Virus record (IMG/VR): IMGVR_UViG_3300023179_000009
Location: 310,001 to 374,000 of that record
Direction: 5' to 3' (one strand)
DNA length: 64,000 nucleotides
Shown in pieces: positions 16,701 through 48,735 of this stretch; positions within the stretch are counted from its first letter, which is position 1, and every line of letters begins with the position of its first letter. The notes beneath the pieces were generated by a model. It had not been told where the DNA came from and did no database searches. It was given only the letters and a program-made list of their open reading frames with translations. Made by a program: the position numbers and the translations under genes.

Positions 16701-17522
16701 AGACTGCCAAGTATTGGGAATTTGTTGGCTGGGGTCCGCTTGCCAACGGCATGAGTTACAACGACACCCAGACTATTGGCGAAGGCGTCTTTGATAGCGA
16801 GGAAGAACTGAGTGATGCTCAGGTTGTGAAGGTTTGCAAGGGTTTCGAGAAGTTGGCAAAAGCATTGTGTGCCGCCTTCAAGAAACGTACTGGCGGTCTG
16901 GAGTTGTTTTTCGATCATTATAACGAAGATGAAGGTGATCGGTACGATAGCGTGGAACACAAGGATGGGTGTGTGTTCTGCGTTGGCAATATGGTGCAGT
17001 TGACTCCTGCTGGCAAGAAGTTCCAGAAGGTTGTTGAGAAGCGTCGTTGGGTTCAGTTTGGTTAAAGGGAAAAACATGAACTATCATCGTGAAGAAGAAT
17101 CCCCGGAGCGGGTTAGTTATTACGACGAAAAGTGGAATACTCGTGACGGAGAAATCGTTGAACGTAACGGGTATTTGATACTAGTTAGAGATTCGGAAAC
17201 TGGGCAGGAACTTTGGAAGTGCAATTTTGAAATTGCTTAATCACAAAGGCAAACAATGGAACGTAAACAACTAACTGCTGGTCAGAAGTATCGGGTGATG
17301 AAGGCTGGTGCTTTTCTTCAATACGAGATCCCGCATTACGGTTACTCAGAGTTTCGCTCTGTCAAACTGTCTGAGGGTGATGTGATTGAGTATGTTCGCA
17401 ACGCTTATGGTGGTGGTAGTGACGATGTGAACTACGACTACTTTTTGAGCGGCGACAAGCGAGGCAAGTTCTGGCCCAATAACTGGGGAGTTTGTGACGC
17501 CAGTTATCTTGAGCCTGTCTGA
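13759..17522 (+). other. Array cargo hypothetical CDS (13759-14097, ~14090-14332, 14339-14635, ~14622-14972, 14969-15208, 15192-15440, 15468-15791, 15819-16211, 16239-16568, 16613-17065, ~17076-17240, 17256-17522)
   Basis: ORFs with GGAG/AGGA RBS; most end in or at a motif copy; many are acidic. Confidence 0.75.
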
Positions 17523-17647
17523 TACCAACTAGGGGGCAACTGTTAAGTAACGCTTAACAGTTGCCCCCTAAGTGCTAAAACTGGCACTTATCTCAAATAA
17601 ATCGCTTTTAAGTGACGTTTTTGGCATTTAAGTACAAGGAGAAAATC

Positions 17648-18016
17648 ATGGGACTTGATCAGTACGCATTTGCTCGTCGTGGTGAGCCGGTCGAGAAGGA
17701 CGGTCAACTCGAATATCCCGACAAGGTGGAGCTTGCCTATTGGCGTAAGCACCCGAACCTTCAGGGCTGGATGGAGAATTTGTACCGGGAGAATGGTGGT
17801 ACTGAGGAGTTCAATTGTCAGGAAGTTGAACTGACTCTTGAGGATCTGGATTCTCTCGAAGCGGCCATCACTGGTACGGAACTGCCGGAAACCTGTGGGT
17901 TTTTCTTTGGCGAGAACAGCGATGATTACTACAAGGACAAGGACTTGCAGTTCATCGAGGAGGCCCGTCAGTACATTAATGATGGATACACGGTCGTTTA
18001 CTATAGCTGGTGGTGA
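17648..18016 (+). CDS. Conserved phage hypothetical protein
   Basis: MGLDQYA...YWRKHPNLQGWM...LPETCGFFFG, a pattern I recall from many phage proteins. Confidence 0.7.
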   Translation: MGLDQYAFARRGEPVEKDGQLEYPDKVELAYWRKHPNLQGWMENLYRENGGTEEFNCQEVELTLEDLDSLEAAITGTELPETCGFFFGENSDDYYKDKDLQFIEEARQYINDGYTVVYYSWW

Positions 18017-18209
18017 AAAAACATGGCAATTCATATTGAAGTTTTAAAAGATTTTATTGATGAAGCTTTTCGCTACGACTCAAACTGTAAATTCTGGGTC
18101 GTCGAAGATAATGGATATTTTTTAGTATCCAATCGGGGACATTTGATGGATCTTGGAGAACCATTTGAAGAAAATGGTGATACCAACTAGCACATCAGGA
18201 GGACCAAAC

Positions 18210-19612
18210 ATGAAACTTGGATCTGAAACTGGTAGTCTGATGAATCATGTCATGACTGGTAGCAACCAGCGTGAGCCGAAGGTTGGTGATGGTGCCACGA
18301 TCTGCATGTGGACTGATCGACATGCGGGTACGATCATCAAGGTGACTCGTTGCACGGTTACTGTGCAGGAGGACAAGGCGATCAGGACGGACACGAATGG
18401 CATGAGCGAGTCGCAGACTTACTCATACGAGCCTGATCCGAATGGTGCTACTTATGTGTTCCGTAAGACCAAGAACGGTTGGAAGTCAAAGGGCGTAGGC
18501 TTGCTGATTGGTGTTCGGCGTCACTATTACGACTATAGTTTTTGAGGAAATTATATGATTAAGTCTGCAACACAAGTAAGAGATGAGATGTTGGGTAACG
18601 ACGAGTACATGACATCTTTAGATAATAGTATTCGTCATGTCATGGACCGCATTGAATGGGCGAAGTCTCAGGGGTTTACCCGTATTTGTTTTTGCCCCGA
18701 AACACGCCACGAGGATCAAATCAGGCGAATGTTTTTGGACAAGGGCTACACGTTTAAGCCCACGGGATACAACGGTGGCGTTTGGCAACTGAGCGAAGAT
18801 ATCTGTTGGTGATACCAACTAGGAGAACACTATGGCTACTACCAAGAAAACTAAAAGTCAGCGAATGAAAAATATTGAGCAGGAAATTATTTGGTATAGG
18901 ATTCGCAAACCTATTGCTGAAGCCATGCGTAAGTGTGGCCAACTAGGCTTTGAAGTCTCAGGACATGGTTGTGGTTTTGGCGGTGAAGATTTTAGCCTTT
19001 TGAATAAGCGTAAAGATCTTTATGTGAACTTTTGCGACCGGGGAAACAGTTGCAAGGTGACTGTTAGCACTTGTGATACCACCAATGATGATGGTTATCC
19101 CATCGAGTTGATCAGCGGGACTATTGGCAAAGCCATGAAGTTTATTGAAGGACGATAATGAAACCACTACTTCAATACGACCGATACAGTAGCAGTGCCG
19201 AGTACGCAGACTACATTTATCACTTTGCAATTGGCGAAGATGGGCTTGGTGGTTTTCTCCGGGTTACTCTTAACAATGAACCCGTACAAAAGCCTTCTGC
19301 CACTCTCGACATCTGCATCAATAATGAAAGTGGCGACGAGTTGATCGAGCAGAGTTTTGAAATTGACCGAAAAGTTGCTCGTGACATGCTGGCAGTTCAT
19401 TACCCCAAACAGGAAGTTATCCAGTGATAGTTTATTCTATTGTTTATTATGATGGCGGAGTTGCAGGTTATTGTTTGCACAAGACCTACAAGAATCTTGC
19501 CGATGCTGAAAAAGAACTTGAAAAAATTGATCAATTAATTGATGACGGAGAATTTGGAAGCGACGTTAAAAGCGCTGGTGTTATCGAAATAAACTGCGCT
19601 GCTGCTGAGTGA
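18210..19612 (+). other. Array cargo hypothetical CDS (18210-18545, 18555-18812, 18832-19158, 19158-19427, 19424-19612)
   Basis: RBS and motif punctuation. Confidence 0.75.
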
Positions 19613-19738
19613 TGGTAATTTAGGGCAAAAAATTGGAAGAATAGATAGAATTTTTCACAATTTTTGCTCTTTACAAATTTCTTTTTTTGTGAATAATGTG
19701 TTTGTTCAATGGAATGGTTCCGTTGAGTTTGTTACCCC

Positions 19739-20044
19739 ATGGAGGTAGTTATGAAGAGTTTTGTTTTTGCTGCTCTTGCAGTTGTTTCGTTTTCGGCTTT
19801 TGTTAATGCCGGTGAGGAAAAGAGTGTTTTGGTCAACACTCCCACCCCGGTTGCAGCCCTGACCGTAGTAGCCGCTCCGGTAGAAACCGTTGTTGTTGCT
19901 TCGGATTGCAAGAATGGCCGCTGCTGTGCCAACGGTCGTTGTTGGCTCACTCCACGGTACGAGAGAACCGTTGCTGTTGAACGCACCTGCACCGATTGTG
20001 AGCAGTCGTACAAGCGGACAGTGACTCGTACTCGTCGTCGTTGA
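19739..20044 (+). CDS. Small secreted Cys/Arg-rich protein
   Basis: Signal peptide MKSFVFAALAVVSFSAFVNA; CKNGRCCANGRC; Arg-rich tail. Confidence 0.65.
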   Translation: MEVVMKSFVFAALAVVSFSAFVNAGEEKSVLVNTPTPVAALTVVAAPVETVVVASDCKNGRCCANGRCWLTPRYERTVAVERTCTDCEQSYKRTVTRTRRR

Positions 20045-20089
20045 TCTTGTCAGATTCCTCAAATTCCTCCTTTCGTTTGAGGGACAATG

Positions 20090-20132
20090 CAGGGGTGTGT
20101 GAGATGCGCTTCTCACACACCCCTGTTTTTTT
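20090..20132 (+). terminator. Intrinsic terminator
   Basis: CAGGGGTGTGTGAGA-N6-TCTCACACACCCCTG followed by T7. Confidence 0.8.
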
Positions 20133-20161
20133 AATACCAACTAGAAAACTACCGATTTTTC

Positions 20162-20896
20162 TTGGAGGTTTTTATGCACACAAGACGATCAGATATTGAA
20201 AAAGGTGAATGTGTTGTTCCCACGGTCAAAGGTCAGTCAGTGGTTTTTGAAAGTTACGAAGAAAATCCTGGCGGCACAAGTTACGTAAGATTTATCGACA
20301 AAGACAATAACGAACTTTTGTATTATAACTGTGAGGAATGGCGGGAAGAACCCGAACTTGTAATGGGTTGCATTATGGCCGCTATTCAAAATGGCGCTCG
20401 TGAATAAAACTTAATACCAACTAGAGGTCAGGTTCGAAACATTATTTCAAAGGAGTGAAAATGTTTTATCTTCAAATTGCTATCGGCATCGTTAGTCTGC
20501 TTGTCGGTTTTGCCCAAATTGCTAAAGAGGGAACCCCTCTTGTTCAAAAGGCTTTAATTCATCAACAGCAGGTTGCAGCACAACAGCGTGCTACTCAACA
20601 GGCTCAGATGAACATTCAATATTATTATCGTGGAAATGATAATGTTTGGCGATATTACAGCGATGCCACTGGTCGATATTGGACTCGGGTGAATGTTCAG
20701 GGTGTTGTCGAATATTGTCAGAATCACAATGGAGGCTGACATGACTCGCTATGAAATGCAAGCGTTCGTTCAAGATCAAATAAACAAAGGACTTGAAAGA
20801 ACAGACGCTATTAGGAATCTAGCCTTTCATTTAGACGAAGATGATCCTGGTGATTTTGCAGAAATATGGTTCCAGCAAAAAATTAGTGGTGAGTAA
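20162..20896 (+). other. Array cargo hypothetical CDS (20162-20407, 20455-20739, ~20741-20896)
   Basis: Follow motif copies 20133 and 20413. Confidence 0.65.
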
Positions 20897-21157
20897 TTAG
20901 TGGTCTTTACGCCAGTCGTATCGTCCACCTTTTTTACCGCTTCCGCCACGTTGTTTATCACGGTTTGTCAACATGCGTCTTGCCTTTGGTCCCTGATAAT
21001 GACCTATGGAAGTGCGACTTTGATAAACCGGCATGGGTGCTTTTCCACGAATATACAAATTCCATTGACGGCAAAACTCACGATCATCAGGATGCGGACA
21101 GTCCAGCTCATTCTTTTGTGATTCGCTAAACCATTGTTGAAAACTACGTAATGCCAT
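20897..21157 (-). CDS. Small basic protein with capsid-targeting-like N-terminus, antisense to the array
   Basis: MALRSFQQWFSE; TATAAATA at 21165-21172 (minus strand). Confidence 0.7.
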   Translation of the reverse strand: MALRSFQQWFSESQKNELDCPHPDDREFCRQWNLYIRGKAPMPVYQSRTSIGHYQGPKARRMLTNRDKQRGGSGKKGGRYDWRKDH

Positions 21158-21190
21158 AATAATCTATTTATACAAAGATTTTTAAATTAT

Positions 21191-21382
21191 CTCGCCAAGA
21201 AATCCCACTTGCTTTAGCGGGTGGTTTGAATTGGCAAAAAGTGAAAAAATTGAAAAAGACACACTACATTAAAACATACCGTAGGTACTACGGGAATTTA
21301 CGCTTGCGGACTCAATATAAAACCTATATGGTAGTTGAGGTTGAAGCAAGAAACCCAATTCCTTTAGGGGTTGGGTAGTTCA
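21191..21382 (+). mobile_element. Non-autonomous IS200/IS605-family mini-element (left-end hairpin + omegaRNA-like right end, no tnpA/tnpB)
   Basis: LE-like CAAGAAATCCCACTTGCTTTAGCGGGTGG; ACCGTAGGTACTACGGGAATTTACGCTTGCGGA; RE-like GAAGCAAGAAACCCAATTCCTTTAGGGGTTGGGTAGTTCA; preceded by TTAT. Confidence 0.7.
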
Positions 21383-21387
21383 TTTTT

Positions 21388-23623
21388 ATGACAACTAAAG
21401 ATAAAGTTTGGTTAATCGTTCTGGCTCTTTTGGACAATAGAAATACCGATCAGGAAATTATTACCCACAGCGGTAACAAGTTAAACAAAAGCGATTTAGA
21501 TCGTTTGTTTAAGTCGGCCGAAAATATTATCGACAAGGCGATTACCAAACCCGAGGAACGTCCCCGTGGTAAAATCATTACCGAGGCGTGCCGTTCCTGG
21601 CTTGATTTCTATGATTGGCCTGATTGATACCAACTAGGATGTCGAAAGGAACCCCAAAAATGCCTACTAAAAATATCCGTATCGTTTCCGGCAAAACTAC
21701 TTTTCGTAGCACCTATGCTGATAGTAATGCTCTTTGGAAGGTGATTGCTCCGAGAGGTAAGGGAACTTATCTTTGCGAAATTGTGAATGAACCCATCGAG
21801 TACGATGGTCGTATTCTCGACGGTGATTACGCTGGTGTTCAAAAGGCTTTTCTTCGTGAAGAAATTTTGCGGTCATTGAATTGGCAAAATGTTTTCGAAA
21901 ACATTCATGATGAAAGCGATAAGTTTTACAACAACCTGAGTGTTGATGACGTTGTTCATTATAATAATGGTTTTAGTCAATACGTTCGATGCAAGGTTGT
22001 TTTAGAGAACAATGAGAAAAGGTTGCTTCCGGTTGCGCTCGTGGGCATTTGGAGAGAGTACGACCTACCTCATCGTCGAATCAATGGAGAAATTGAATAC
22101 GGTTATCATGCAAGGCAGATCAATGAGCAAGTTTCCATGCGACCTAATGCTACCAATATTTGGGAGTTTAATCGCAAGGGAGCAAACCCTGCCAACCTGC
22201 TGCCGATTGATTTGAGTGTTCCCGATATGACCCCTGATCAATCCGATATTGCAAAAAAGTGGCAGACTGTTCAGGCAATTAATAGTGTTACTTCGGATTA
22301 TTCCACCGATAATCCACAAGATATTATTGATAGAGTGAAGAGTTTGCTCAATACCAACTAGTATCTCGGAGGACCAAATCATGCGACTTAATATTGGCGA
22401 TAAGGTTATTGTTAGAACCGAAAGTGGTTCAGATCGTCGTGGGACTATCCTTGCTCTCGGTCACAATCAGGATGTAAAGATTGGTGTTGGAGAACCTCAT
22501 TACTATAACTATCACGAAAAGTGGTTTGCGAGTAATAAGGTTCTTGCCTTTCACGAGTTGCCATACGAAGAGGCTGAAAAAACTTGGCAGACTGAACTTC
22601 CTCATGCTTTTGAGTATGCCAAGAAAGTGTTTGCAAAGTCTCTTCCCGATAGCATCTTGGAATTTGATGGTGAGATGATTCGTGATACTAGAAGCGGCTT
22701 TTATATCGCTGGTGCGATTATCGAGCGACGTACAATCGGTTCTGTGATGGAAATGGCCGGTTACGGTGTTTTTGCAGAGCAGGTTGTTCCTGGAATCAGG
22801 ACTTTTTCAAACGGTGATCCGGGCTATCCTGATGATGTTGAGTGCGTCGAGTTTGGAACGCATAGCACTTATCAAAGTGCCGTCATCGTGATGGCAAAAG
22901 AAGTATTTGCTAGTAACCTGCAAGCCGCTATCGAATTTGAATCAGAGCAAGAACTTGCAAAACTGTATATTGATGATACCAACTAGGTGATCGAAAGGTT
23001 ATAATTATGCTTGAATTTGAAACTATCTATGTTTATTCCGAAGACGGTCTGGTTCGAGTTGATCTCGATTGGATTGGCGAGGGAATTGACGGCGACTATG
23101 ACGAAAATGATCCGAAGGATGTTCCGCTGCTTCGTTATGGAGTGAGTCGCAAGTTTACGAAAGAGTGTGAAAACCACGAAAATTTTCAAGATGGAGAAAT
23201 TGGTGAGTGGTTTGATATTGAAGATAGCAGTTATTGCACTCAATTAATCGCAACTGCTCCTCGTGAACAATTGATTGAAGCCGCTCAATTTATTCTTGCT
23301 CATGTTGAGGATAACGTAAGGTATTTGCAACGTCAAAAACGTTTGTATGAAGCATTGAGTTGGATTTGTATTCAAGACGGTCAACCTTATTGTGAATACG
23401 GTACATTTAAGGTGTAATTATGAAGGTTTACATTGATGGCGAATCGGTAAAGGTTCAAAATGATGTGCGCATCATTTATGACATTGTTGAAAACGATCAA
23501 GAAGCCGAGTTGCATGTAGTTGCAACAAGTGAAGGTTTGATTTACGACGTTATTAACAATGAAGAAGTTGTTGCGACTATGTGTAGTTTGGCTCAAGATT
23601 TAGTCGATGATGTGATCGGCTAA
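21388..23623 (+). other. Array cargo hypothetical CDS (21388-21627, ~21660-22361, 22381-22986, 23007-23417, 23420-23623)
   Basis: ORFs bounded by motif copies; two end in ...NTN*/DTN*. Confidence 0.75.
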
Positions 23624-23859
23624 TAATCGTACATAATTAGGTAAATTAGCCTAGTTATGTACGGAGGGCGGAATGTTTCGAGTAAAATTAGAAAGACAAA
23701 TCAAACACATCGTCAGCACTATTGTCATTGAAGTAAAAGCAAAAAATGAAACACAAGCGGCTAATTTAGCAGAGCAAGTAATGGGTAAAAACTGGCGTTT
23801 CAGGGCTATTGTTCGATAATCCAAAATAAGTTATACCAACTAGTCAGCCGTGATGATTT

Positions 23860-24148
23860 TGCCCGATAGCTTAACTGGTAGAGCAAGGGATTTAACACAA
23901 AAAACTAGGATGCTTAAAAGGAAACTTTCAAAGTAGAACTGCTCAAATTCGGTGAACGGCCTGTTTCGCAAGAAACGACCCAATGCCGAGCCAAGCCGGG
24001 AAACCGGAAGGTGTAGAGACTTGACGGGCAGCACCTAAAACCACAAGGTAATGGTGAAGGCAAAGTCCAGACTACAAACCGAAAGGGTAGTGAAAACTAT
24101 AGTAGTATGTGGTTCCCTGGGTTGCAGGTTCGACTCCTGCTCGGGCAT
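23860..24148 (+). tRNA. trnQ: tRNA-Gln(UUG) split by a group I intron (exons 23860-23893 and 24110-24148)
   Basis: U1-A72 acceptor TGCCCGA/TCGGGCA; joined loop AGGGA-TTTTGGT-TCCCT; T arm GCAGG-TTCGACT-CCTGC. Confidence 0.8.
23894..24109 (+). ncRNA. ORF-less group I intron (216 nt)
   Basis: P AAATTCGGTGAA (23945), Q AATGCCGAG (23982), R GGTGTAGAGACT (24010), S AAGGCAAAGTCC (24057), terminal G. Confidence 0.88.
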
Positions 24149-24254
24149 TTTTAATTTAACTTTTATTTTTAGACCAATATCCTCTAGGTGGCTTGCTAAT
24201 CTCATAAAATTTGGCAAACATTAATTAATATGTAAAATAAATAATGACCTGTAA

Positions 24255-24335
24255 ACCAGAGTGGCGGAATGGTAAACGCAGTTGACTGTTAATCAACCGT
24301 CGAAAGACCTGTAGGTTCGAGTCCTACCTCTGGTG
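24255..24335 (+). tRNA. trnN: tRNA-Asn(GUU) with long variable arm
   Basis: ACCAGAG/CTCTGGT+G, GTTGA-CTGTTAA-TCAAC, variable CGTCGAAAGACCT, GTAGG-TTCGAGT-CCTAC. Confidence 0.85.
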
Positions 24336-24368
24336 TTAGTTGATACCAACTAAGGACACAGTTTTATT

Positions 24369-24441
24369 GGGCCTTTAGCTCAATTGGCAGAGCAAGGAGC
24401 TTTTAACTCTTAGGTTCGGGGTTCGAGTCCCCGAGGGCCCA
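24369..24441 (+). tRNA. trnK: tRNA-Lys(UUU)
   Basis: GGGCCTT/AGGGCCC, loop CTTTTAA, CGGGG-TTCGAGT-CCCCG. Confidence 0.93.
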
Positions 24442-24475
24442 CTGTCGGTTTTTCTTATCTTCTAAGAGAATCTAT

Positions 24476-28309: not shown

Positions 28310-28350
28310 TACCAACTAGGTTGTTGTTCTCTTTTACACAAAGGATTTAT

Positions 28351-38990: not shown

Positions 38991-39035
38991 TAGCGTGTAG
39001 TCACTGTGGCTACAACACAACCCAAAGAGGAAATC

Positions 39036-39473: not shown

Positions 39474-39535
39474 TACAAACTAGGGGAGTGTAGGAAACAC
39501 CTACACTCCCCTAGTCTTTTTCTGAAAGGACCACA

Positions 39536-40356: not shown

Positions 40357-40401
40357 TACCAACTAGGTGGATGTTCCAACCACAACCCCGGAGAACTCAC
40401 A

Positions 40402-40950: not shown

Positions 40951-41001
40951 TACCAACTAGGTGAGCGTGAGGGTTGTTCCTCACGCTCACCTAGTCCTTT
41001 T

Positions 41002-41603
41002 ATGAAAGGGTTTATCGTGGCAACCAAAGTCAAAGTCACAAATCGAATCAAGCGGCAGATCCAGGCCGAGGCTCTCCGGGCATTGCACGACCGGGGACAC
41101 TTCACCGCCGCCGAGCGGCACGCCGGAATCGAGGCTGACCGCTGCATGTGTGGCGGTTTCGTGTGGGGCACGAATCTGCTCTGCAACGAGTGTGTGATGG
41201 AACTCGCCCGCAAGCAAAAGTAATACCAACTAGGGGAGTGTAGGAATCACCTACACTCCCCTAGTCTTTCAAAGAAAGGTTGACCATGCGAAAGATCGAA
41301 AAGAAAATGATCGAGGCGATTCAGAATCGCAAGGACATGAGCCTCAACAACACCGTGGTCAAGCACGGTACAGCCACCAGCGTTGTGTTTCTCCACAATC
41401 ATCCCATTTGCATTTTCATGTGGGCTGATAATGCGGTGGCTGTCAGCAATTGTGGCTGGTCAACGAACACCACCAAAAGCCGCCTGAATGCGGTTTTGGG
41501 TTCGTTTTGTGATACGGGGATTCACCAGCACAAGCATGTCTGGTACATGGGCAAGGAAGAGTTCCGCAACGGAACTCGTGTCCCGATGAAGCAGATCGCC
41601 TGA
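41002..41603 (+). other. Array cargo CDS (41002-41223; 41280-41603)
   Basis: Motif-hairpin-RBS architecture. Confidence 0.75.
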
Positions 41604-41667
41604 TACCAACTAGGGGAGTGTAGGAATCACCTACACTCCCCTAGTTCTTTTTCCAGAAAGGGAAAAC

Positions 41668-42129
41668 ATGAAACTCATCCTGATGCGTGGCGTGAGCGGC
41701 AGCGGCAAAAGCACGCTGGCCGAAAAGATTTGCAGCGAACAGGAATTTGCTGTAATTGTTTCAACCGATCACTATTTCATGGTCGATGGTGAATACCGAT
41801 TCGACCCGAAGCGTCTCGGTGAGTATCACTCCGCTAACGTGAACCGAACCGAACAGTTCATGGTTGAACGGTGTGCGTGTATCATCGTGGACAACACGAA
41901 CACACAAGCGTGGGAAATGAAACCCTACGTCGAGTTGGCCATGAAGCACGGCTACGCTATCGAAATCCATCAGCCCGATCCGGTCAGTTTCGAGGAACTG
42001 ATGCAGCGGCAGGCAAACCGGGCCGACAGCAACAAGGCTCTGCCCGCCGAAGTGGTAAAGCGGATGCTCGACCGATTCGAGCACGATGTGACAGTGGCAA
42101 AGATTCTCCAATCGAAGCGACCCTTCTGA
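41668..42129 (+). CDS. P-loop kinase, AAA_33 / polynucleotide-kinase (N4BP2-like) family
   Basis: LILMRGVSGSGKSTLA, VSTDHYF, IIVDNTN...EMKPY. Confidence 0.82.
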   Translation: MKLILMRGVSGSGKSTLAEKICSEQEFAVIVSTDHYFMVDGEYRFDPKRLGEYHSANVNRTEQFMVERCACIIVDNTNTQAWEMKPYVELAMKHGYAIEIHQPDPVSFEELMQRQANRADSNKALPAEVVKRMLDRFEHDVTVAKILQSKRPF

Positions 42130-42186
42130 TACCAACTAGAAGGAGTGTGATAAGCACTCCCCCTAGTTCTTTTTCCAGAAAGGAAC

Positions 42187-43286
42187 ATGATGGATCACGA
42201 ACAGGCCATGCGGAATGCCATGAAGCGTGTGATGACGTTCATGGATAGCCTCTCGCCGGGGAACAGTCCCCGTGCCACAACAACTGACAGCCCGATGATT
42301 CACTTCAATGGCTGGAATCGGTGGTGTGTCAAGTTCGACACACACAGCGGTAAAAACTATCACGCATTTGGTTCTACGCTCGTCGAAGCGTTCAATCGGT
42401 TGGTCGATGAACCAACCGTGTCTGATACCAACTAGACCAGTGTTCCCTTCCCCTCTTCAAAGGAGTCTGCCATGCAGATCAATTTCCTCGGTGAGAACTA
42501 CAACGTCGAGCCGGTTGCCATGCGATACACAGACGGCAATCTGGCAATTCAAGTTCTGCGTGCCGATGGGCCTTTCGGTATGCTCTCGACCAATGTCGAG
42601 GGTGTGCAACTCGCCCCGAACGAGTTCTGCGTGAAAACGTGGAGCGAGAACGATCCGTGGGCATTGGATCTTATCCGCCAGTGTCCGCAGTTCGAGAACA
42701 CTGGACGCACGTTCCGTAGCGGGTTCGTCAGCGGCCCGATCTACCGGATGGTTGGTTGATACCAACTAGATCGATACCGAACTACGGCCCTCGTCGTTCA
42801 AGACAGAAAGGACGCTGTAGTGTCATGCCAAAGCGGTGGCCACCGCACGGCAATCGTTGCCAAAGTACACGGCAACGATCAGCACACTACGGAAATGCGG
42901 GTGCGATACCCGCCGGGGTCAGCATACACTGTAGGCCAAAAGCCGAACAACGAGGCGTCTATCCCACGCCTACAACCCCGAAAGGGGAGAGAGTGTATGG
43001 GGTCTAATACCAACTAGGGGGACATGGGGAGACAACCCATGTCCCCCTAGTTCTTTTATGAAAGGCAAACATGGTTCCACGAGAAATGTATCGGTGGGAA
43101 TATTTCCATGCGATGGGCAACAACTGCCGATTGCATGGAATGTCATCTCACGATGCCCAAACCGTGATCGATAAGGCCGCTGGTTTCGGCAACGATTTCG
43201 AAAACTTCTGGACAGGATTTCTGTACGGCAGAAGTGATCAAATCGCTTCTTTGCCAAGCAAAGATTCCGTGGTCTGGGTTTTTTAG
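42187..43286 (+). other. Array cargo CDS (42187-42435; 42472-42759 DUF4313-like; 43071-43286)
   Basis: 42472 has LAIQ...PFGMLSTN...FCVKTWSEN. Confidence 0.65.
42770..43005 (+). ncRNA. Candidate structured non-coding RNA cassette
   Basis: No RBS-supported ORF; many nested stems (see findings). Confidence 0.5.
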
Positions 43287-43385
43287 TCTGTCACATTTCG
43301 ACAGGCCGTGCGTAATACCAACTAGAACGGTATCGAGAATGGCTCTCGACGCCCACAACCCTCCTGTCCAGAAAGGACAACTGTC

Positions 43386-43700
43386 ATGAAGTTCATCCTC
43401 AATGCGTTTTCTCTAAACATGATCGGCACATTTCCGGCGACCATCACGGTCGAGGAAGTCTCGACCCACGAAGCCTGTGTCGAGGCTCACGGTGTCACCA
43501 GTGGCGTCGGCCACCCCGATACGGCGGCGGTGTTCGCTTCGATTCTCGGTACGCCCGTTCCGATGAATCGTGCAACCGTCAGTCTCGTGTCTGGTGATCG
43601 TGTGCTGGTGGGCCAATACAGTGGCCCTCGTCTGCCCGAGGGTGCAACTACGCTGCCCGAGGGTGCCACGATCAAGTGGCTCGTCGTCTCTGTCAACTGA
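43386..43700 (+). CDS. acrIII-1: DUF1874 / AcrIII-1 cyclic-oligoadenylate ring nuclease homologue (anti-CRISPR type III)
   Basis: ILNAFSLNMI...SGVGHPDTA...PMNR...LVGQYSGPRLPEG: GH, NR and RLPEG signature of the STIV B116/SIRV1 gp29 family. Confidence 0.8.
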   Translation: MKFILNAFSLNMIGTFPATITVEEVSTHEACVEAHGVTSGVGHPDTAAVFASILGTPVPMNRATVSLVSGDRVLVGQYSGPRLPEGATTLPEGATIKWLVVSVN

Positions 43701-43771
43701 TACCAACTAGCAGGGTGTGGTGATGAGCCACACCCTGCTAGTCCTTCAACCCCCAACCCTGAAAGGCAATC

Positions 43772-44149
43772 ATGCCCTACACCGCTTGCGTCCTCGAAGA
43801 GTCATCCCGCACCACGCTCGTGGAGTGGATGTATTCCAATCACGAAGTGCCCGAGCACTTCGAAATCGTCGGCCACCACTGCACCGTCGATCTGAAGCCC
43901 ATCGCCAAAAGCATGGGCTGCGATCTGGATGGCCAGCGACACGAAATGCGTGTCGTTCGTTTCGGTCGTCTCGACGGCATCATGGCTGTCGAAGTCGAGA
44001 CGGTTGTTCCCAGCAAGAACGACCGCAAGCACATCACCTTGTGCTACGACAAGCCGAATGGCTGGAAACCGAAGCAGTCGAACGACATCGTGGAATGGAC
44101 TGACATCGAACCGTTCGTTCTGCACGGTGTCGTGAAGGAATGTGCGTGA
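43772..44149 (+). CDS. 2H phosphoesterase (RNA-repair type)
   Basis: Two HxT-like motifs: HHCTV and HITL. Confidence 0.7.
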   Translation: MPYTACVLEESSRTTLVEWMYSNHEVPEHFEIVGHHCTVDLKPIAKSMGCDLDGQRHEMRVVRFGRLDGIMAVEVETVVPSKNDRKHITLCYDKPNGWKPKQSNDIVEWTDIEPFVLHGVVKECA

Positions 44150-44212
44150 TACCAACTAGGGGGATGTGATGAAAGTCACATCCCACCTTTCCTTTTCACA
44201 AAAAGGCCGATC

Positions 44213-45325
44213 ATGAACACTGATTTTCAAATGATGGTCGAGGCGCAGGTGGGTGACAAAACGGTCACCGTTTATTGCGAAACCCATGCAGAAGCGTGGG
44301 CTGCGGAAAATGCCATCCGCAACATGGCACGACAGTTCGGCTTGCAAGTGGGCACGGTGACAATCACCGTCAACGACACACCACGGTGGCGAGTCGATAC
44401 AATCTGGCTCAATCCTCCATACAGTGTTGTGCAGGATCAGTGATACCAACTAGGGGGGTGTGAACAACACCCCCCTCTTCTCTTGAAAGGAGAACGACGA
44501 TGGAAAACGAAGGCCAGATGCGAAGTAGGACATGCACGTTCGTCAACAGAACGTACATGTTCGAACACATCGAAGAGGCACTGATGTTTGCTCCTCCGGA
44601 GCAGACGATCAGCATCGAGATTCTGCCAGATGGACGCTACAGTGTTACCGAAACGTGGCGGGATGCGGAGCCTGCCGACCGCAGACGGTTCGCCAGCATC
44701 TGCAATCGTGGCGGTAACTGATACCAACTAGGGGGACACGGGGAACAACCGTGTCCCCCTAGTTCCGTTTTCCCTCAAACCAGAGAGGCCATCATGACGA
44801 TCAAAGTTCAGATTCCGGGCCGAGTCACAGCCTCTGCCCTTGTCGAGTCCGGACTCGACGCTTCTAGCAACGGAGTGCTGACATTCCACGCTTTCAGCGA
44901 CGCCATGAAAGCGAGGGTGTTGGAACTGATTGCCGCAGGGCAACACGTGGTGGTCAAGGCCACCACCGAAGTGCCCCGAACCGGCGATTGGTTCGAGCCA
45001 GCACAGTGATACCAACTAGGTGGACACGAGGACACAACTCGTGTCCCCCTAGTTTCGTTTCTCCTAACCCCGGAGTTTTTCCATGAACGATACAATCAAA
45101 TGGCGAAACTTGCCCGCCCGCATGACCCCGAAGGTCGATCCCTCGTTCGATGAACTGTGTCGTGCGATGAAGAATCGTACACAGATCACGGTCATCGGAG
45201 CATGGGGCCATCCCATCACTGGCCTCGTCAACAAAATCGAGGCAGAGGGTGGTAGCGGTCGATGCTGGAACGTGACGATCAGTCACGGCATCCACACCAG
45301 CACGATCTTCGTCCGCACGGCGTGA
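44213..45325 (+). other. Array cargo CDS (44213-44443, 44500-44721, 44794-45009, 45083-45325)
   Basis: Each ends exactly on the TGA of a motif copy. Confidence 0.78.
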
Positions 45326-45393
45326 TACCAACTAGGGGGACACAGGACACAAGCCTGTGTCCCCCTAGGTTCGTTTCCACCCCGGAGGATCAC

Positions 45394-45945
45394 ATGATCC
45401 ACATCGCTAGTTTCGTTCGGCGTCAAACCGCCGACAGTCGGTTCAGCCACTGGACGCTGGACGACAATGCTCTCGTCCAAAGGATCGAAGCCGGTCTGCC
45501 CAATGCCAAACCCGGATACCGGGATGGCGTGGTGCTCGTGCCGGTCGATCCCGATGGCTTCTTCAGTGCCACGGTCACGCTGACCAACGGCCAAAAGCTG
45601 GTGGGCGAGTTCGCCAGCCGTCGCACCGGCGAAGAGCCTCGTAAGAGTCTCGCCGCCATCGGCCAGAAGCAGCCCGCCGGTACGGTGTGGGTCGTGCTCT
45701 ACGCCCACCACGTTCTCGCTGAGAAAAACGAGAACGAGACCGATGCCGACTGGGAAGTGGTCAGCGTCAACGCCAGCCCGAGCGTGGACGCTGAACCGGC
45801 TCCCATGCCGCCGGAAACGCTGATCGCCAACCACTTCGAGTTGGATGGCGGGACGGCGACGAAGATGAGCGACAGTGACTTCGTCGCATCGCTCAAGGCC
45901 AGCGTCCTCTACTGGAAGGACAAGGCACAGGTTCAGCCTGAGTGA
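45394..45945 (+). CDS. DUF3228-like protein
   Basis: FVRRQT, KPGYRDGVVLVPV, RRTGEEP, VVLYAHHVLAE, DWEVVSVNA, PM.PET, GGT. Confidence 0.7.
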   Translation: MIHIASFVRRQTADSRFSHWTLDDNALVQRIEAGLPNAKPGYRDGVVLVPVDPDGFFSATVTLTNGQKLVGEFASRRTGEEPRKSLAAIGQKQPAGTVWVVLYAHHVLAEKNENETDADWEVVSVNASPSVDAEPAPMPPETLIANHFELDGGTATKMSDSDFVASLKASVLYWKDKAQVQPE

Positions 45946-45979
45946 TACCAACTAGAACAGTGTCGAGGGGGATGGCAAC

Positions 45980-47405
45980 GTGCTGTCCCCCTCGACGGTT
46001 CGATTCCTTCAGGAGAACAAAATGGAGTTGCACATCTACCAGCTCGGGGGTCTCGACAACGACTCCCTGATCGGCATCGCTCACGACACGCACACGATGC
46101 GGTCGCTGATCGAACTGGCCGAACGCCGGGGTGCCACGGGCGTGAGCCTGCACGGCACCGTCCCGCACTTGCGGGAGAGCGTGAGCGGTGAGTTCACGCT
46201 GGACGAGGCCAAGCGGGAATACAACAGGGCCGTCGATGCGGTCAACGCCGTCATCATGGACGGCATCGACCCGGCGTTCGGGATGCAGCCCTGATACCAA
46301 CTAGGGGACTACAGGAACGGCCTGTAGTCCCCTAGTTGCGTTCCTGCCCCGGAGACTTCGCCATGATTTCTGAAGGGCCGAACGATCTTTTCATTGAAGA
46401 CGGCGAAAGCCTGTCCTCGATCATCGAACGGATCGGCAAGAAGTGGCCCGGTGCCACACTCGATCATTGCAAGATCGAGCACAACGACTGGTTCGAAAAA
46501 ATGATCGTGAAGTTGGTATCGCCTCAGTGATACCAACTAGGGGGACACGAGGACACAACTCGTGTCCCCCTAGGCTCGTTTTCCTCAACAACAGGAGCCT
46601 TCCCCATGAAGGTGCAAAAGAAAGTTTTCCGTTTCCACGCCAAGCGTGGGCAGCAGGATATGGTGATCGAACTGCTGCGGCAGTATGGTCAACCGTGGAC
46701 GACCACGAGCGCCGAGGGCATTCGTGTGTTCGTCGAGTTGCCCGAGGGCGTCAGCAAGCGGAGCGTCGATAAGATGCTGCGTGATGCTGGTGTGCCGGGT
46801 GCGGCATCATGCCGTAACGTCCCCATCGTGGACGTTGGATATGATGCCGGAAGGATGGAGCCTGCCCTTGAACGGCTCTATCGAGCCGGATACTTGAACC
46901 GAAAGGTCAAGATCTCGTGGGGCGGCACACGGGTCACCATCGGCTATCTTCGGGCAGAAGATTACTGCGACGGGCCGGGATTCGGCTTGTACGTAGACCC
47001 CGACAAAAAGATGAACGGCTACCAACTGCCGACATCGGCAGTTCAAGGAACACCGGGACAGAAACTGCCGTGGTGTTGATACCAACTAGGGGGACACAGG
47101 ACACAAGCCTGTGTCCCCCTAGGTTCGTTTCCCCTCCAACAAGAAAGATTCTTCACATGAAGAACTTCCTCAAGCTGCTCCTCTGCTCTGTTCTGGTCGG
47201 ATCGTGCTTCGCCGCCATCATCTGCGGCTACGTGATGGTCGGAACGGCCATGGGGTATTTCCACCCCAACTACGTTCCCGAAGCGGGTGAAACGCTTCTC
47301 GGTTTCTACGTCACGCTGTACACATGCAGCGTGGCCCCATTCCCGTTGCTGGTGCTGCTCATCAGTACCAGTACGGCCGTTGCGAGTGTGTTCGAGCATC
47401 GGTGA
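45980..47405 (+). other. Array cargo CDS (45980-46294, ~46363-46530, 46606-47079, 47157-47405 membrane protein)
   Basis: Each ends on a motif TGA. Confidence 0.75.
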
Positions 47406-47415
47406 TACCAACTAG

Positions 47416-47601
47416 AACACCACACGAGTGAACACCGTCTACGGCTGGTCATCCTCACCCCCTGCTTGCAGGCGTAGAGGGTGCCAAACCGGAAGCGTGG
47501 GCCGACATGCGGGTTCGATCCCCGTAGTCGTTTCCTGTCTGGTGCGGATCATAGGGGCTGATCGTAAATGCTCCGCCAGCCGTAGACGGCTTCACCTTGT
47601 T
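47416..47601 (+). ncRNA. Candidate structured RNA with a tRNA-like T arm
   Basis: 14-bp terminal stem 47435-47448/47576-47589; GCGGG-TTCGATC-CCCGT at 47509-47525. Confidence 0.5.
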
Positions 47602-47681
47602 AATACCAACTAGGTTGGTGTCGAGTGAGTCACAACGTGTGACACACTGACGTTCGGTAGGTTTCTTTCAGGAGGATCGCC

Positions 47682-48056
47682 ATGAGCAAGCCCAAGGTCA
47701 AGTCCGAGCCCGTCGCCCGCACCGCCAAGCCCAAGTCGGCCAAGCAGTTGGCCAAGCGGGCGGCGAACATCGCTGCCTGGGAAGCCCGCAACGCCGCCCT
47801 TCGGAACGGCACCTTCAAGGGCGTGGTCGAAAAGGCCGCTGAGGCGAAGGCCCGACACGTGGCCGAGCGGATGGCCGAGACGGAGAAGGCCCGCACGATG
47901 GTGGTGACCCACATGAGCCACCCGGTCTACGGCCAACGGCTCAGCCGTTTCCTCAACGGCAGCAAGGCCGACCCGAGGTTGCTGGCCAACGTGGTGATCC
48001 CCAACTGGATCAAGACGCAGGGTATCGTCGTCGATCACGTGCGACCCACCACGTGA
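47682..48056 (+). CDS. Basic Ala/Lys-rich hypothetical protein
   Basis: AGGAGG RBS, MSKPKVK start, high-GC codons. Confidence 0.75.
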   Translation: MSKPKVKSEPVARTAKPKSAKQLAKRAANIAAWEARNAALRNGTFKGVVEKAAEAKARHVAERMAETEKARTMVVTHMSHPVYGQRLSRFLNGSKADPRLLANVVIPNWIKTQGIVVDHVRPTT

Positions 48057-48306
48057 TCTGATACCAACTAGGGGGGTGTGAGTGATGCAAGTCGCTCACA
48101 CCCCCCAGCGGGTTGACGGCCCGCCATCCTGTCCCCGTCTCGACCCCTGAGTCATCCACACTCATACGCTTCGAGTGACTCAAGTCGGGGGATGGGATAA
48201 CTGGCCGTCGCCAGTCTTCCACCTAGTGATACCAACTAGGGTGGTGTCGAGTGAGTCACAACGTGTGACACACCGACGTTCGGTAGGTTTCTTTGGGAGT
48301 CATGCC

Positions 48307-48675
48307 ATGAGCAAGACGAAGAGCAAGGTCAAGCAGCCGGAGGCCGTGGTCGAGCAGCCGGTCGCCCCGGTCGAGACGAAGAGCATCGCTTGGCCGGTCG
48401 AGGCCGAGAAGGAACTGCTCTCCTCCGGTGGCTACATCAGCGGCGGTCGTTTCTATCTGCCGATGAATCGTGCGGCGGGTACGTGCGAGTACACGAGCAA
48501 GGCTGGTCGCACGGCGACCTACTGCATCTTCCGGGCCGACACGAACGGCTACAACTTGCTGCCCATCAGCAAGAGTGGCAAGGTCGCTCACAGCGACATC
48601 AAGCAGAACGGCAAGTACCTCAACGTGGGCTTCCGTGTCAGCAGCGAACGTGTCAGCAAGGTCGTGATGCGGTAG
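48307..48675 (+). CDS. Hypothetical protein; shares leader and N-terminal style with 47682
   Basis: GGGAG RBS, MSKTKSKVK start. Confidence 0.75.
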   Translation: MSKTKSKVKQPEAVVEQPVAPVETKSIAWPVEAEKELLSSGGYISGGRFYLPMNRAAGTCEYTSKAGRTATYCIFRADTNGYNLLPISKSGKVAHSDIKQNGKYLNVGFRVSSERVSKVVMR

Positions 48676-48735
48676 TGATACCAACTAGGGGGGAGCGTGG
48701 TGAAGAGCCACGCTCCCCCCGACTGTCGAACGGAG

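What the first reader, a model, noticed from the sequence alone, without database searches (positions are those of the whole stretch)
17521..48720. CTAG-closed GC hairpins attached to the motif fall into locally clustered families
Seen: about half of the right-hand copies continue into a stem whose base is the motif's own AACTAG paired with CTAGTT, often followed by a T-rich run. Example at 30609: AACTAGGGGGATGTGA-GCGA-TCACATCCCCCTAGTT. Near-identical families cluster: GGGGGAGGTAACACTCCCCC after 36389/38191/40201; GGGAGTGTAGGAA(A/T)CACCTACACTCCC after 39472/41222/41602; GGGGACAC...GTGTCCCC after 44720/45008/45324/46529/47078; GGGGGTGTGAATAACACCCCC after 32533/32865; CAGGGTGTGG...CACCCTG after 39852/43699. 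Inference: junction elements are copied or homogenised between neighbouring units while the cargo genes differ. The AAC...GTT closure echoes attC folding. The CTAG...CTAG bracketing could alternatively be a target-site duplication of a minimal insertion.
Basis: partly seen in the sequence, partly recalled or inferred. Interest (0 to 1): 0.78.

Follow-up and report, generated by a model that had tools for sequence, protein, structure and literature searches.

The report
Terminator hairpins in phage gene junctions
In a 459-kb freshwater phage, about 80 small genes in a row are each separated by the same 13-letter signal, half of them followed by a strong hairpin that looks like a transcription stop; these junction pieces are copied and swapped between genes, much like the "regulatory cassettes" that shuffle genes in T4-type phages.

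Summary
In the window, 83 copies of T-R-A-TACCAACTAG lie on the + strand between 7.3 and 48.8 kb, at gene ends. Thirty-three are followed at once by a strong G+C hairpin, 23 of them closed CTAG...CTAG and about two thirds followed by a T-run. Near-identical hairpins lie closer together than chance allows (0 of 5000 permutations), and the genes beside them are unrelated.

In related metagenome contigs the motif never changes while genes drift to 70-90% identity. Cassette order and content differ, homology breaks fall at the junctions, and the roughly 55-nt stretch from motif to start codon can be exchanged while both neighbouring genes stay.

The attC and target-site-duplication readings fail. 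Half the junctions have no hairpin, most stems are perfect, the sequence after GTT is pyrimidine-rich, and a hairpin-free version of a junction differs over its whole length.

Best reading: the hairpins are intrinsic terminators built onto the downstream half of a promoter-like element (motif, five free bases, then Y-R-T). A sister lineage of huge phages has another 9-mer in the same frame and almost no hairpins. The closest known system is the PeSL of T4-type phages; this is a new variant. No RNA data exist, so the promoter and terminator roles are inferred.

The parts
7317..48804 (+). Array of 83 junction signals T-R-A-TACCAACTAG-N5-Y-R-T, one in front of nearly every small + strand gene and several tRNA genes. 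Motif starts: 7320 7574 7749 9750 11447 12704 13357 13731 14323 15441 15792 16212 16573 17523 18181 18813 20135 20415 21628 22352 22977 23834 24344 25091 25908 26794 27210 27813 28037 28310 28769 29287 29577 29863 30611 30841 31448 31726 31966 32535 32867 33386 33743 34494 35124 35644 36002 36391 36758 37194 37455 37712 38193 38450 38981 39474 39854 40203 40357 40951 41224 41604 42130 42426 42760 43008 43316 43701 44150 44444 44722 45010 45326 45946 46295 46531 47080 47406 47604 48062 48230 48679 48795
17528..17573 (+). junction hairpin, singleton, imperfect CTAG closure
   Evidence: -34.5 kcal/mol
28773..28807 (+). junction hairpin, family D, AACTAG/CTAGTT closure, T-run
29295..29323 (+). junction hairpin, singleton, no CTAG closure
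32539..32571 (+). junction hairpin, family D, T-run
32872..32902 (+). junction hairpin, family D, identical to 32539 copy, no T-run
36009..36045 (+). junction hairpin, singleton (TAG/CTA closure); replaced by other hairpins in L147 and L131
36395..36426 (+). junction hairpin, family A, T-run
37717..37753 (+). junction hairpin, singleton, no T-run
38197..38228 (+). junction hairpin, family A; absent before the same gene in L131
38454..38497 (+). junction hairpin kept before the same gene in L130, L149, L131
39479..39515 (+). junction hairpin, family B; family A at this place in L130, L149, X11
39859..39895 (+). junction hairpin, family E, no T-run
40207..40238 (+). junction hairpin, family A, T-run
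40956..40995 (+). junction hairpin, singleton, T-run
41229..41265 (+). junction hairpin, family B
41608..41646 (+). junction hairpin, family B, T-run; extra units inserted at this junction in X11 and L127
42134..42168 (+). junction hairpin, family D (weakened), T-run
43012..43052 (+). junction hairpin, family C, T-run
43706..43742 (+). junction hairpin, family E
44158..44188 (+). junction hairpin, singleton, no CTAG closure, T-run
44452..44476 (+). junction hairpin, family D, no CTAG closure
44726..44764 (+). junction hairpin, family C
45014..45054 (+). junction hairpin, family C (one T:C mismatch, compensated in L127)
45332..45368 (+). junction hairpin, family C, identical to the 47086 copy
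45955..46001 (+). hairpin whose main stem starts at offset 15-17 from the motif, followed by GGTTCGATTCC; possible 5'-terminal stem of the downstream RNA
46299..46337 (+). junction hairpin, related to family C
46537..46573 (+). junction hairpin, family C
47086..47122 (+). junction hairpin, family C
47610..47660 (+). family F structured leader, stem from offset 16
48071..48106 (+). junction hairpin, singleton, no CTAG closure, no T-run
48234..48289 (+). family F structured leader, 97% like the 47603-47668 copy
48688..48720 (+). junction hairpin, singleton, no CTAG closure
7282..7307 (+). terminator-like hairpin plus T-run lying UPSTREAM of motif 7320
20089..20126 (+). strong terminator-like hairpin plus T7 lying UPSTREAM of motif 20135
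26751..26791 (+). hairpin directly upstream of motif 26794
48735..48767 (+). terminator-like hairpin plus T-run 27 nt upstream of the last motif copy
48802..48851 (+). structured non-coding element after the last motif copy; marks the right end of the array, where G+C drops from 59% to 33%

Best explanation
The hairpins are transcription-terminator stem-loops. They form part of small regulatory junction modules that separate the genes of a very large accessory-gene array in a huge (459 kb) freshwater phage.

Each module has three parts. First comes an invariant 13-nt signal, T-R-A-TACCAACTAG, followed by five free bases and a conserved Y-R-T. Next comes either an unstructured C-rich leader or a G+C hairpin with a T-run. 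Last come a ribosome-binding site and the start codon.

I read the signal as a phage-specific promoter-like element, with the RNA 5' end at the purine 16 nt after the motif start. This is inferred, not shown.

Because the hairpin's 5' arm has to contain CTAG-N5-YRT, its 3' arm ends in CTAG(TT). That accounts for the CTAG closure and for the family-like look of all these hairpins. RNA arriving from upstream contains the full stem and the U-run and would be stopped. RNA that begins at offset 16 lacks most of the 5' arm and would not be stopped.

The near-identical, locally clustered families arise because these short modules are repeated dozens of times. They recombine with each other through short-homology recombination or gene conversion, with ends in the motif on the left and in the T-run or ribosome-binding site on the right. 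The same process moves, deletes and replaces whole cassettes. This is the behaviour described for PeSL elements of T4-type phages.
For: Shown by sequence:
- The motif is 40-fold over-represented, confined to one strand, lies at gene ends, and has fixed YRT at offsets 15-17 in both hairpin and hairpin-free junctions.
- Across all loci there are 229 junctions. Of these, 113 have hairpins in 96 distinct sequences, with mean stems of 15 bp and loops of 3-9. All four base pairs occur at one stem position of family B, which is covariation.
- G.T wobbles outnumber A.C mismatches on the + strand, 73 to 2 by RNAfold and 6 to 0 by a strict count.
- T-runs follow hairpins but not hairpin-free junctions. 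Terminator-like sites number 42 against 19.2 +/- 4.6 expected in 28.9-48.85 kb, and the best-scoring ones are the junction hairpins.
- Sigma-70 consensus promoters are not enriched: 17 found against 16.3 expected.
- In four junctions the terminator-like hairpin lies upstream of the motif, which leaves the motif as the only conserved element before the next gene.
- ORF 14339 starts exactly at offset 16, and ORF 18832 starts 3 nt after it.
- Stem starts are bimodal, at offsets 4-9 (87 junctions) and 15-17 (6 junctions).
- Read-through RNA folds at -28.8 kcal/mol on average; RNA starting at offset 16 folds at -7.5.

Comparative:
- The motif is invariant in relatives whose genes are 68-97% identical.
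- 48% of homology ends lie within 15 nt of a motif, against 10% expected.
- Cassette-wise insertion, loss and replacement are seen in a seawater relative.
- When neighbours change, the junction stays with the gene it precedes in 16 of 25 cases, and with the gene it follows in 8 of 25.
- The module can be swapped while both neighbours are kept.
- A sister lineage of huge phages (contigs of 381 and 146 kb) carries homologous cassettes in another order. It uses TGTACCCTA in the same frame (CTA at positions 6-8, TGT at 15-17), often with the same TGTTCGATC leader, and almost never a hairpin.
- PeSL properties are taken from PMC2839356 and PMC4122927.
Against: No RNA data exist. No listed RNA run holds the region, so neither initiation at offset 16 nor termination is shown.

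The order here, signal then hairpin, is the reverse of PeSL, which has stem-loop then promoter.

The polymerase or sigma factor that would read a 13-nt signal with no -35 element and a G-rich downstream region is unknown, and the rest of the 459-kb genome was not examined.

About a third of the hairpins lack a T-run.

One junction upstream of the window (L025:879) has a complete terminator-like hairpin after offset 16.

At 9702-9729 a perfect sigma-70 promoter lies just upstream of a motif copy, so there the motif would itself be transcribed.

The same motif also occurs in 55-57% G+C contigs that carry a serine recombinase and an ArdC-like gene. That is awkward for a signal read by a polymerase private to one phage.

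The recombination mechanism, general or dedicated, is not determined.
Confidence: 0.6

Rival explanations
1. RNA punctuation. The array is transcribed as long RNAs from a few host-type promoters. The 13-nt signal directs an endoribonuclease that cuts between Y15 and R16, and the hairpins protect RNA ends rather than terminate transcription.
For: A few near-perfect sigma-70 promoters exist on the + strand (7764-7791, 9702-9729, 33419-33446). The offset-16 boundary would fit a cleavage site as well as a start site. Motif copies precede tRNA genes, which are processed anyway. A third of the hairpins lack T-runs.
Against: In half of the junctions the 3' half of the signal and the putative cut site would be buried in a stem of about -30 kcal/mol. 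T-runs follow most hairpins. Strong terminators upstream of the motif at 20135 and 7320 would prevent the motif from being transcribed at all.
Confidence: 0.17
2. Integron-like cassette system. The motif plus hairpin is an attC-like site that folds as single-stranded DNA and is recombined by a dedicated site-specific recombinase, which captures cassettes.
For: Cassette-wise gain, loss and reordering occur with breakpoints at the motif. Cassettes differ widely in G+C. Cassette genes and the motif are shared with high-GC contigs that encode a serine recombinase inside a motif-bounded unit. The base of many stems is AAC...GTT.
Against: Half of the junctions, and nearly all junctions in the sister lineage, have no hairpin yet still behave as cassette boundaries. 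Most stems are perfect, without extrahelical bases: 69 of 96. GTT is followed by YYTTT, not RRRY. T-runs point to an RNA function. No tyrosine recombinase was found among about 40 ORFs scanned in the window. Breakpoints also occur at the start-codon side of the module.
Confidence: 0.08
3. The hairpins are small mobile palindromes (REP- or MITE-like) that insert at the CTAG of the motif and duplicate it.
For: CTAG brackets 73 of 113 hairpins. Exact copies sit beside unrelated genes.
Against: Filled and empty versions of the same junction differ over the whole stretch from motif to ATG. No empty form with the motif followed directly by the T-run exists. There are 44 families among 113 hairpins, so there is no proliferating master copy. 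The CTAG on the 3' side is what base-pairing with the fixed 5' CTAG predicts. No transposase was found.
Confidence: 0.05
4. The motif is an ops-like loading site for an antitermination or processivity factor that lets the polymerase pass the hairpin that follows. On this reading the hairpins are conditional terminators that gate the array.
For: The signal sits immediately before the terminator-like hairpins. It is strand-specific and invariant. Promoters appear to be few.
Against: The signal is equally conserved where no hairpin follows and in the sister lineage that lacks hairpins. It also lies after terminators. The conserved YRT at a fixed distance and the leaderless ORF start are not explained.
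Confidence: 0.07

Closest known systems
PeSL (promoter-early stem-loop) mobile regulatory cassettes of T4-type phages (Arbiol et al. 2010, PMC2839356; Comeau et al. 2014, PMC4122927)
   Same: Both are short composite regulatory modules between small accessory genes in hyperplastic regions. Both have stem-loops rich in GGGG...CCCC that act as terminators. In both, insertions, deletions and replacements between related phages are bounded by the modules, and crossovers occur between promoter, ribosome-binding site and ATG. Cassettes are transcriptionally self-contained.
   Different: No sigma-70-type -35/-10 promoter is present here. Instead there is an invariant 13-nt signal plus YRT. The order is signal then hairpin, with overlap, rather than stem-loop then promoter. 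The scale is much larger: 83 copies in 41 kb of a 459-kb genome. The same signal occurs in genomes of 33% and 57% G+C, and a sister lineage uses another 9-mer. Mini-circles were not tested.
Intrinsic (Rho-independent) terminators
   Same: G+C-rich stems of 8-22 bp, loops of 3-9, a U-run after the stem in about two thirds of the window's 33 hairpins (60 of 113 over all loci), an A-rich 5' flank pairing with the first U's, and G.U pairs tolerated on the sense strand.
   Different: The 5' arm is fixed by an overlapping conserved signal. A third of the hairpins lack a U-run. Activity is untested.
Integron attC sites and cassette arrays
   Same: A one-directional array of short, unrelated, compositionally diverse genes separated by palindromic elements; cassette-wise variation between relatives; AAC...GTT at the stem base.
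   Different: No integrase was found. The hairpins are optional and perfect. The conserved element is a linear 13-mer rather than a folded R''/L''-L'/R' structure. T-runs are present. The junction module travels with the gene it precedes.
Promoter families of phage-encoded RNA polymerases (T7, T3, SP6 type) - resemblance from general knowledge
   Same: A highly invariant signal of about 20 bp in the gene's orientation, a purine-rich region after it, and lineage-specific bases in a conserved frame.
   Different: No polymerase gene is identified here. The signal is shorter. The number of copies is far higher. There is no experimental start site.
REP/BIME extragenic palindromes
   Same: G+C-rich intergenic palindromes that follow genes, fall into families and are preceded by a conserved tetranucleotide.
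   Different: There are many small families rather than one proliferating family. No RAYT-type gene was seen. The hairpins are tied to a longer signal that also occurs without any hairpin.

Membership tests
PeSL-type mobile regulatory cassettes | Sits in intergenic spaces between small, mostly unknown genes of a plastic phage region | tested here: met
   About 80 small + strand ORFs. About 40 of the larger ORFs in and beside the array were scanned against Pfam or PHROGs, and most have no match.
PeSL-type mobile regulatory cassettes | G+C-rich stem-loop (GGGG...CCCC) that can terminate transcription | tested here: inconclusive
   The structure and T-runs are present. Termination itself is not testable with these tools.
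PeSL-type mobile regulatory cassettes | Strong sigma-70-like early promoter (-35, -10, AT-rich upstream part) downstream of the stem-loop | tested here: not met
   Sigma-70 consensus matches are not enriched: 17 against 16.3, 48 against 45, 21 against 23. Only about 20-25 nt separate the hairpin from the ATG.
PeSL-type mobile regulatory cassettes | Insertions, deletions and replacements between related phages are bounded by the modules | tested here: met
PeSL-type mobile regulatory cassettes | Recombination between neighbouring modules releases mini-circles | not testable with these tools
   Needs inverse PCR or raw long reads.
Integron (attC cassette array) | IntI-type tyrosine recombinase with attI and Pc next to the array | tested here: inconclusive
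   None was found among the ORFs scanned in the window or in the 10 kb to its left. The rest of the 459-kb genome was not seen.
Integron (attC cassette array) | Every cassette ends in an imperfect palindrome with R''/L''-L'/R' boxes, extrahelical bases and GTTRRRY | tested here: not met
   Hairpins occur at 113 of 229 junctions. 69 of 96 distinct stems are perfect. GTT is followed by pyrimidines.
Intrinsic terminator | G+C-rich stem, short loop, U-run directly after the stem | tested here: met
   Met for 23 of 33 hairpins in the window and 60 of 113 overall. The remainder lack the U-run.
Insertion element with target-site duplication (MITE- or REP-like) | Filled and empty sites differ only by the element plus one copy of the duplicated target | tested here: not met
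   The junction before gene 38246 was compared between the window or L149 and L131; the whole module differs. No empty form was found.
Phage-specific promoter family | Invariant signal in the gene's orientation in front of transcription units, with a fixed start-site context and lineage-specific variants | tested here: met
   (sequence features only)
Phage-specific promoter family | Primary transcripts start at a fixed distance from the signal, and a cognate polymerase or sigma factor is encoded | not testable with these tools
   No RNA run holds the region.

The most novel reading that the evidence does not exclude
The 13-nt signal is not only a regulatory element. It is the joint of a phage gene-cassette exchange system, a functional analogue of integrons without attC. 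Through it, single-gene cassettes of very different G+C content are traded among huge phages and a high-GC element that carries a serine recombinase and ArdC. A dedicated enzyme would act at the motif, and the CTAG-closed hairpins would help by exposing the site.
Probability: 0.12. Interest if true: 0.9.

Novelty: new variant of a known kind. Interest (0 to 1): 0.58.

Why it matters
Huge phages carry hundreds of small genes of unknown function, and how these regions gain, lose and express genes is poorly understood.

Here the junctions are unusually legible. One invariant signal marks about 80 consecutive genes. Relatives differ cassette by cassette at that signal. The regulatory module itself is exchangeable. 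The same signal links genomes of 33% and 57% G+C.

If the signal is a promoter whose start lies inside the 5' arm of the following terminator, it would be a compact self-insulating expression unit, which would also interest synthetic biology. It would point to an unidentified polymerase or sigma specificity that differs between sister lineages of huge phages.

The finding extends the PeSL idea from T4-type phages to huge freshwater phages. It also gives a simple sequence handle, the motif, for finding accessory-gene cassettes in metagenomes.

Tried and rejected
- GenBank phages: no nucleotide match to the array or its right flank. Short junction queries gave only chance hits, and the LR756504 hit was checked and has no repeated motif. 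One weak protein hit to Microcystis phage MaAM05.
- IMG/VR: motif plus GGGGG occurs only in the source contig. The 14-mer scan gave mostly chance hits. Contigs L166-L174, found with a two-motif pattern, hold 2-5 copies with other flanks and are not arrays.
- Bacterial and archaeal genomes: no array. One 13-kb contig binned as a Kuenenia MAG carries the high-GC version; the binning is doubtful.
- RNA evidence: no listed RNA run holds the region, so start and stop sites could not be read.
- Short-sided joints in the laid contigs of X3 and X8 (side 20-30 nt) are repeats of junction sequence and were not used.
- Tandem duplication of gene plus junction as the source of the families: rejected, because there is no paralogy.
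- Assembly chimera as the source of the G+C gradient: rejected.
- G+C gradient as stepwise amelioration from one insertion end: not supported, because G+C is kept by each cassette in another lineage where the order is scrambled.
- Rfam: no family at the junctions.
- The 492-aa ORF to the right of the array is DUF262/GmrSD-like by atlas search only, and is not a recombinase.
- PHROGs and Pfam on the flanking large ORFs gave nothing relevant.

Full report
WHAT THE WINDOW IS. The window equals positions 310001-374000 of a 458,813-bp viral contig, IMGVR_UViG_3300023179_000009 = Ga0214923_10000003. The stretch 38-44 kb is held at 96-99% of its sampled words by three independent lake or freshwater data sets from 2015, 2018 and 2019, and partly by many others. 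The region is therefore real and recurrent, not an assembly chimera. It has no nucleotide relative among GenBank phages. Its content is typical of a phage accessory region. It holds about 80 small + strand ORFs, and the roughly 40 larger ORFs scanned mostly have no family match. It also holds three HNH endonucleases, a metallophosphatase, an AAA_33 kinase, a HAD_SAK_2 domain protein, DUF3228 and DUF6011 proteins, five tRNA genes and a group I intron.

THE OBSERVATION. TACCAACTAG with at most one mismatch occurs 89 times against 2.1 expected. Of these, 83 lie on the + strand between 7320 and 48804. The position matrix shows a 13-nt element, T-R-A-TACCAACTAG. Nothing is conserved upstream of it. 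Downstream there is a free spacer and then Y at offset 15, R at offset 16 (never C) and T at offset 17. The TRA is usually the stop codon of the preceding gene, and in 14 cases the motif's TAG is the stop. The TRA is kept even after a tRNA gene, so it belongs to the signal.

Thirty-three copies run straight into a single strong stem-loop. Twenty-three of these are closed CTAG...CTAG, and 23 have at least 4 T in the next 8 nt. Representative hairpins have z-scores of -5.3 to -6.8, whereas a hairpin-free junction has z = -0.13. The repeats are 36-66 nt long. They begin at the TGA of the signal and end before the next gene. The neighbouring genes are not paralogous. Similar hairpins lie closer together than chance allows: 2.9 against 7.5 kb overall, and 1.6 against 4.4 kb within 36-48.7 kb, in each case 0 of 5000 permutations. 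The caveats are that the families are interleaved, that one spans 16 kb, and that the G+C trend contributes to the signal.

RELATIVES. A metagenome scan for motif-GGGG...CCCCTAG gave 28 loci. Twelve carry homologous cassettes at 68-97% nucleotide identity. In all of them the 13-mer is unchanged, while cassette content and order differ. For example, L131 has the order 28.8, 29.6, 35.1, 36.8, 32.9, 37.5, 37.7, 36.0, 38.2, 38.45, 39.5 kb in window coordinates, with many extra units.

Ends of homology fall at the junctions: 21% lie inside the 13-mer (3% expected), 48% within 15 nt (10% expected) and 75% within 60 nt (31% expected). A seawater relative laid on 38-44 kb shows three things: extra sequence inserted at junction 41604, a cassette replaced exactly from motif to motif (42140 to 42423), and a cassette missing, with motif 42760 joined to the next hairpin.

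When neighbours change, the module from motif to ATG stays with the gene it precedes in 16 of 25 cases and with the gene it follows in 8 of 25. The module can also be exchanged with both neighbours kept. The junction before gene 39536 has family B in the window and L131 but the exact family A hairpin in L130, L149 and X11. The junction before gene 36067 has three different hairpins in three genomes. The junction before gene 38246 has a hairpin in the window and L149 and none in L131. The exchanged piece runs from the motif to about the start codon.

WHAT THE HAIRPINS ARE. Over all loci there are 229 junctions. Of these, 113 have hairpins in 96 distinct sequences forming 44 families at 85% identity. 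Stems average 15 bp, loops are 3-9 nt, and 69 of 96 stems are perfect. Pairing is maintained through sequence change: family B has A:T, C:G, T:A and G:C at the same stem position, and a T:C mismatch at 45010 is compensated in L127. G.T pairs on the + strand far outnumber A.C mismatches (73 to 2; 6 to 0 by a strict count with p = 0.03). This points to folding of the sense strand. T-runs accompany hairpins and are absent from hairpin-free junctions. These are the marks of intrinsic terminators, or at least of RNA stem-loops, and not of attC sites.

WHAT THE SIGNAL IS (INFERRED). Both classes of junction keep Y-R-T at offsets 15-17, with R at 93-94% and C at 0-1%. Stem starts are bimodal: offsets 4-9 in 87 junctions and offsets 15-17 in 6, with almost none between. 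One ORF starts exactly at offset 16 and another 3 nt later. In four junctions a terminator-like hairpin with a T-run lies upstream of the motif (7282, 20089, 26751, 48735). That leaves the motif as the only conserved element before the next gene. Sigma-70 consensus sites are not enriched.

A sister lineage was found through a DUF3228 homologue. It includes IMG/VR contigs of 381 and 146 kb. It has arrays with homologous cassettes in scrambled order and a different signal, AAAnnAAT-TGTACCCTA-N6-TGT, in the same frame as the window's signal. The shared positions are T0, C6, T7, A8 and TGT at 15-17. Its junctions often continue with the same TGTTCGATC C-rich leader and almost never carry a hairpin.

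A conserved core with lineage-specific bases is what one expects of a promoter read by a lineage-specific polymerase or sigma factor. I therefore favour a promoter-like element whose RNA begins at offset 16. Under this model the full hairpin exists only in read-through RNA (mean -28.8 kcal/mol), while RNA begun at offset 16 keeps a remnant of -7.5 kcal/mol lying 9-12 nt from the T-run. The module would then stop upstream transcription without stopping its own. The model also explains the CTAG closure and the common GGGGnTGTG look of the hairpins, because the 5' arm is dictated by the signal and the 3' arm is its complement.

None of this is shown experimentally, since no RNA run holds the region. 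Three observations count against it. One junction outside the window has a full terminator-like hairpin after offset 16. One motif copy lies just downstream of a perfect sigma-70 promoter. The same motif is used in 55-57% G+C contigs that carry a serine recombinase, an ArdC-like protein and a RuvB-like protein, and two of their small genes are homologous to window cassettes.

WHY THE FAMILIES CLUSTER. Three things combine. The modules are short repeats that can recombine, and exact copies 1.8-3.8 kb apart, together with lineage-specific swaps, show recent copying. Families are old and shared across genomes: the largest occurs in the window, in two relatives and in the high-GC contigs. Cassettes of similar G+C, which carry hairpins of matching type, are sorted along the array. 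G+C belongs to the cassette, not to its position, because homologous cassettes keep their GC3 in the sister lineage, where they are scattered.

COMPARISON WITH KNOWN SYSTEMS. The closest is the PeSL of T4-type phages. These are composite promoter/terminator modules with GGGG...CCCC stem-loops between small genes of hyperplastic regions, and they mediate indels, replacements and mini-circle formation by recombination (PMC2839356, PMC4122927). The present system works like a PeSL but fails one defining feature, the sigma-70-type promoter placed after the stem-loop, and it has the opposite order. I therefore file it as a new variant rather than a member. Integron attC, REP/MITE insertion, RNA punctuation and ops-like antitermination were considered and are set out as rivals.

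VERDICT. The copying inference is supported. The attC and target-duplication readings are not supported. The hairpins themselves are ordinary terminator-like stem-loops. What is unusual is the invariant signal they are grafted onto, its density, its lineage-specific sister form and its presence in genomes of very different G+C content.

Noticed in passing
window 8868-9123 (with ORF 8449-9015): Rfam finds a complete group I intron (70 bits). An HNH_3 endonuclease ORF lies just upstream and overlaps it. The interrupted host gene was not identified; the flanking ORFs are 7843-8328 and 9257-9691, the latter weakly GNAT-like.
   Followed up: partly
window 7764-7791, 8416-8443, 9702-9729, 33419-33446: Four near-perfect or perfect sigma-70 consensus promoters lie on the + strand, two of them 12 of 12. 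They sit next to the tRNA, HNH and intron part of the array, although such sites are not enriched overall. A seawater relative carries the 33386-type junction after a different gene.
   Followed up: partly
window 25956-26744, 27273-27575 and 43-48.8 kb; drop at about 48.9 kb: Cassette GC3 ranges from about 0.3 to 0.9 and rises along the array. G+C then falls abruptly from 59% to 33% at the array's right end. Homologous cassettes keep their G+C in a sister lineage, except DUF3228 (0.38 against 0.78). The origin of the high-GC cassettes is unexplained.
   Followed up: partly
L153 (Ga0214917_10002300, 23.5 kb), L125-L135, L143, L154, L155: Contigs of 55-57% G+C carry the same 13-nt motif 5-6 times. 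It stands in front of a serine recombinase, an ArdC-like antirestriction protein and small genes, two of which are homologous to window cassettes (37505-37711, 19424-19612). These contigs also use family C hairpins. What these elements are is unknown.
   Followed up: partly
L163, L164, L175-L186 (IMGVR_UViG_3300032334_002567, 381 kb; IMGVR_UViG_3300037189_025222, 146 kb): Sister arrays use a different junction signal, AAT-TGTACCCTA-N6-TGT, with homologous cassettes in scrambled order and almost no hairpins.
   Followed up: yes
many hairpin-free junctions, e.g. window 36768-36790, 25918-25940; L164 throughout: The leader after the signal often reads (T)GTTCGATC(A)CCC. This resembles a tRNA T-loop sequence without its stem, and it is shared by the two phage lineages. 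Whether it matters beyond common descent of the module is unknown.
   Followed up: no
the motif itself: TACCAACTAG is identical to the antisense of a conserved 16S rRNA stretch. It was seen in a printed Staphylococcus epidermidis 16S reverse strand in PMC11723854. This is possibly coincidence; it was not tested against any candidate host.
   Followed up: no
window 48802-48851 and L135:9697-9740, L153:12454-12540, L155: The last motif copy of the array is followed by a structured non-coding element containing ...CTGGCGG.GATACCG... instead of a gene. A loosely similar element ends the short arrays of the high-GC contigs.
   Followed up: partly
window 9760-9815 and 23857-23900: tRNA-like fragments with T-arm-like sequence follow motif copies 9750 and 23834. 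Neither ARAGORN nor Rfam calls them.
   Followed up: no
window 49099-50577: The first gene after the array (492 aa, no Pfam hit) resembles DUF262/GmrSD_N-HNH nucleases by language-model and structure look-up. This is a lead only.
   Followed up: partly
window 10430-10542: A direct tandem repeat of 56 nt at 89% identity lies inside the HNH endonuclease ORF 9989-10774.
   Followed up: no
L159 (about 9.5 kb left of the window): The motif continues to the left at lower density, 7 copies in 10 kb, each heading a group of 1-6 tightly packed genes. A PcfJ-like gene lies there. L025 (contig 283-289 kb) also has copies, so the array is longer than the window shows.
   Followed up: partly
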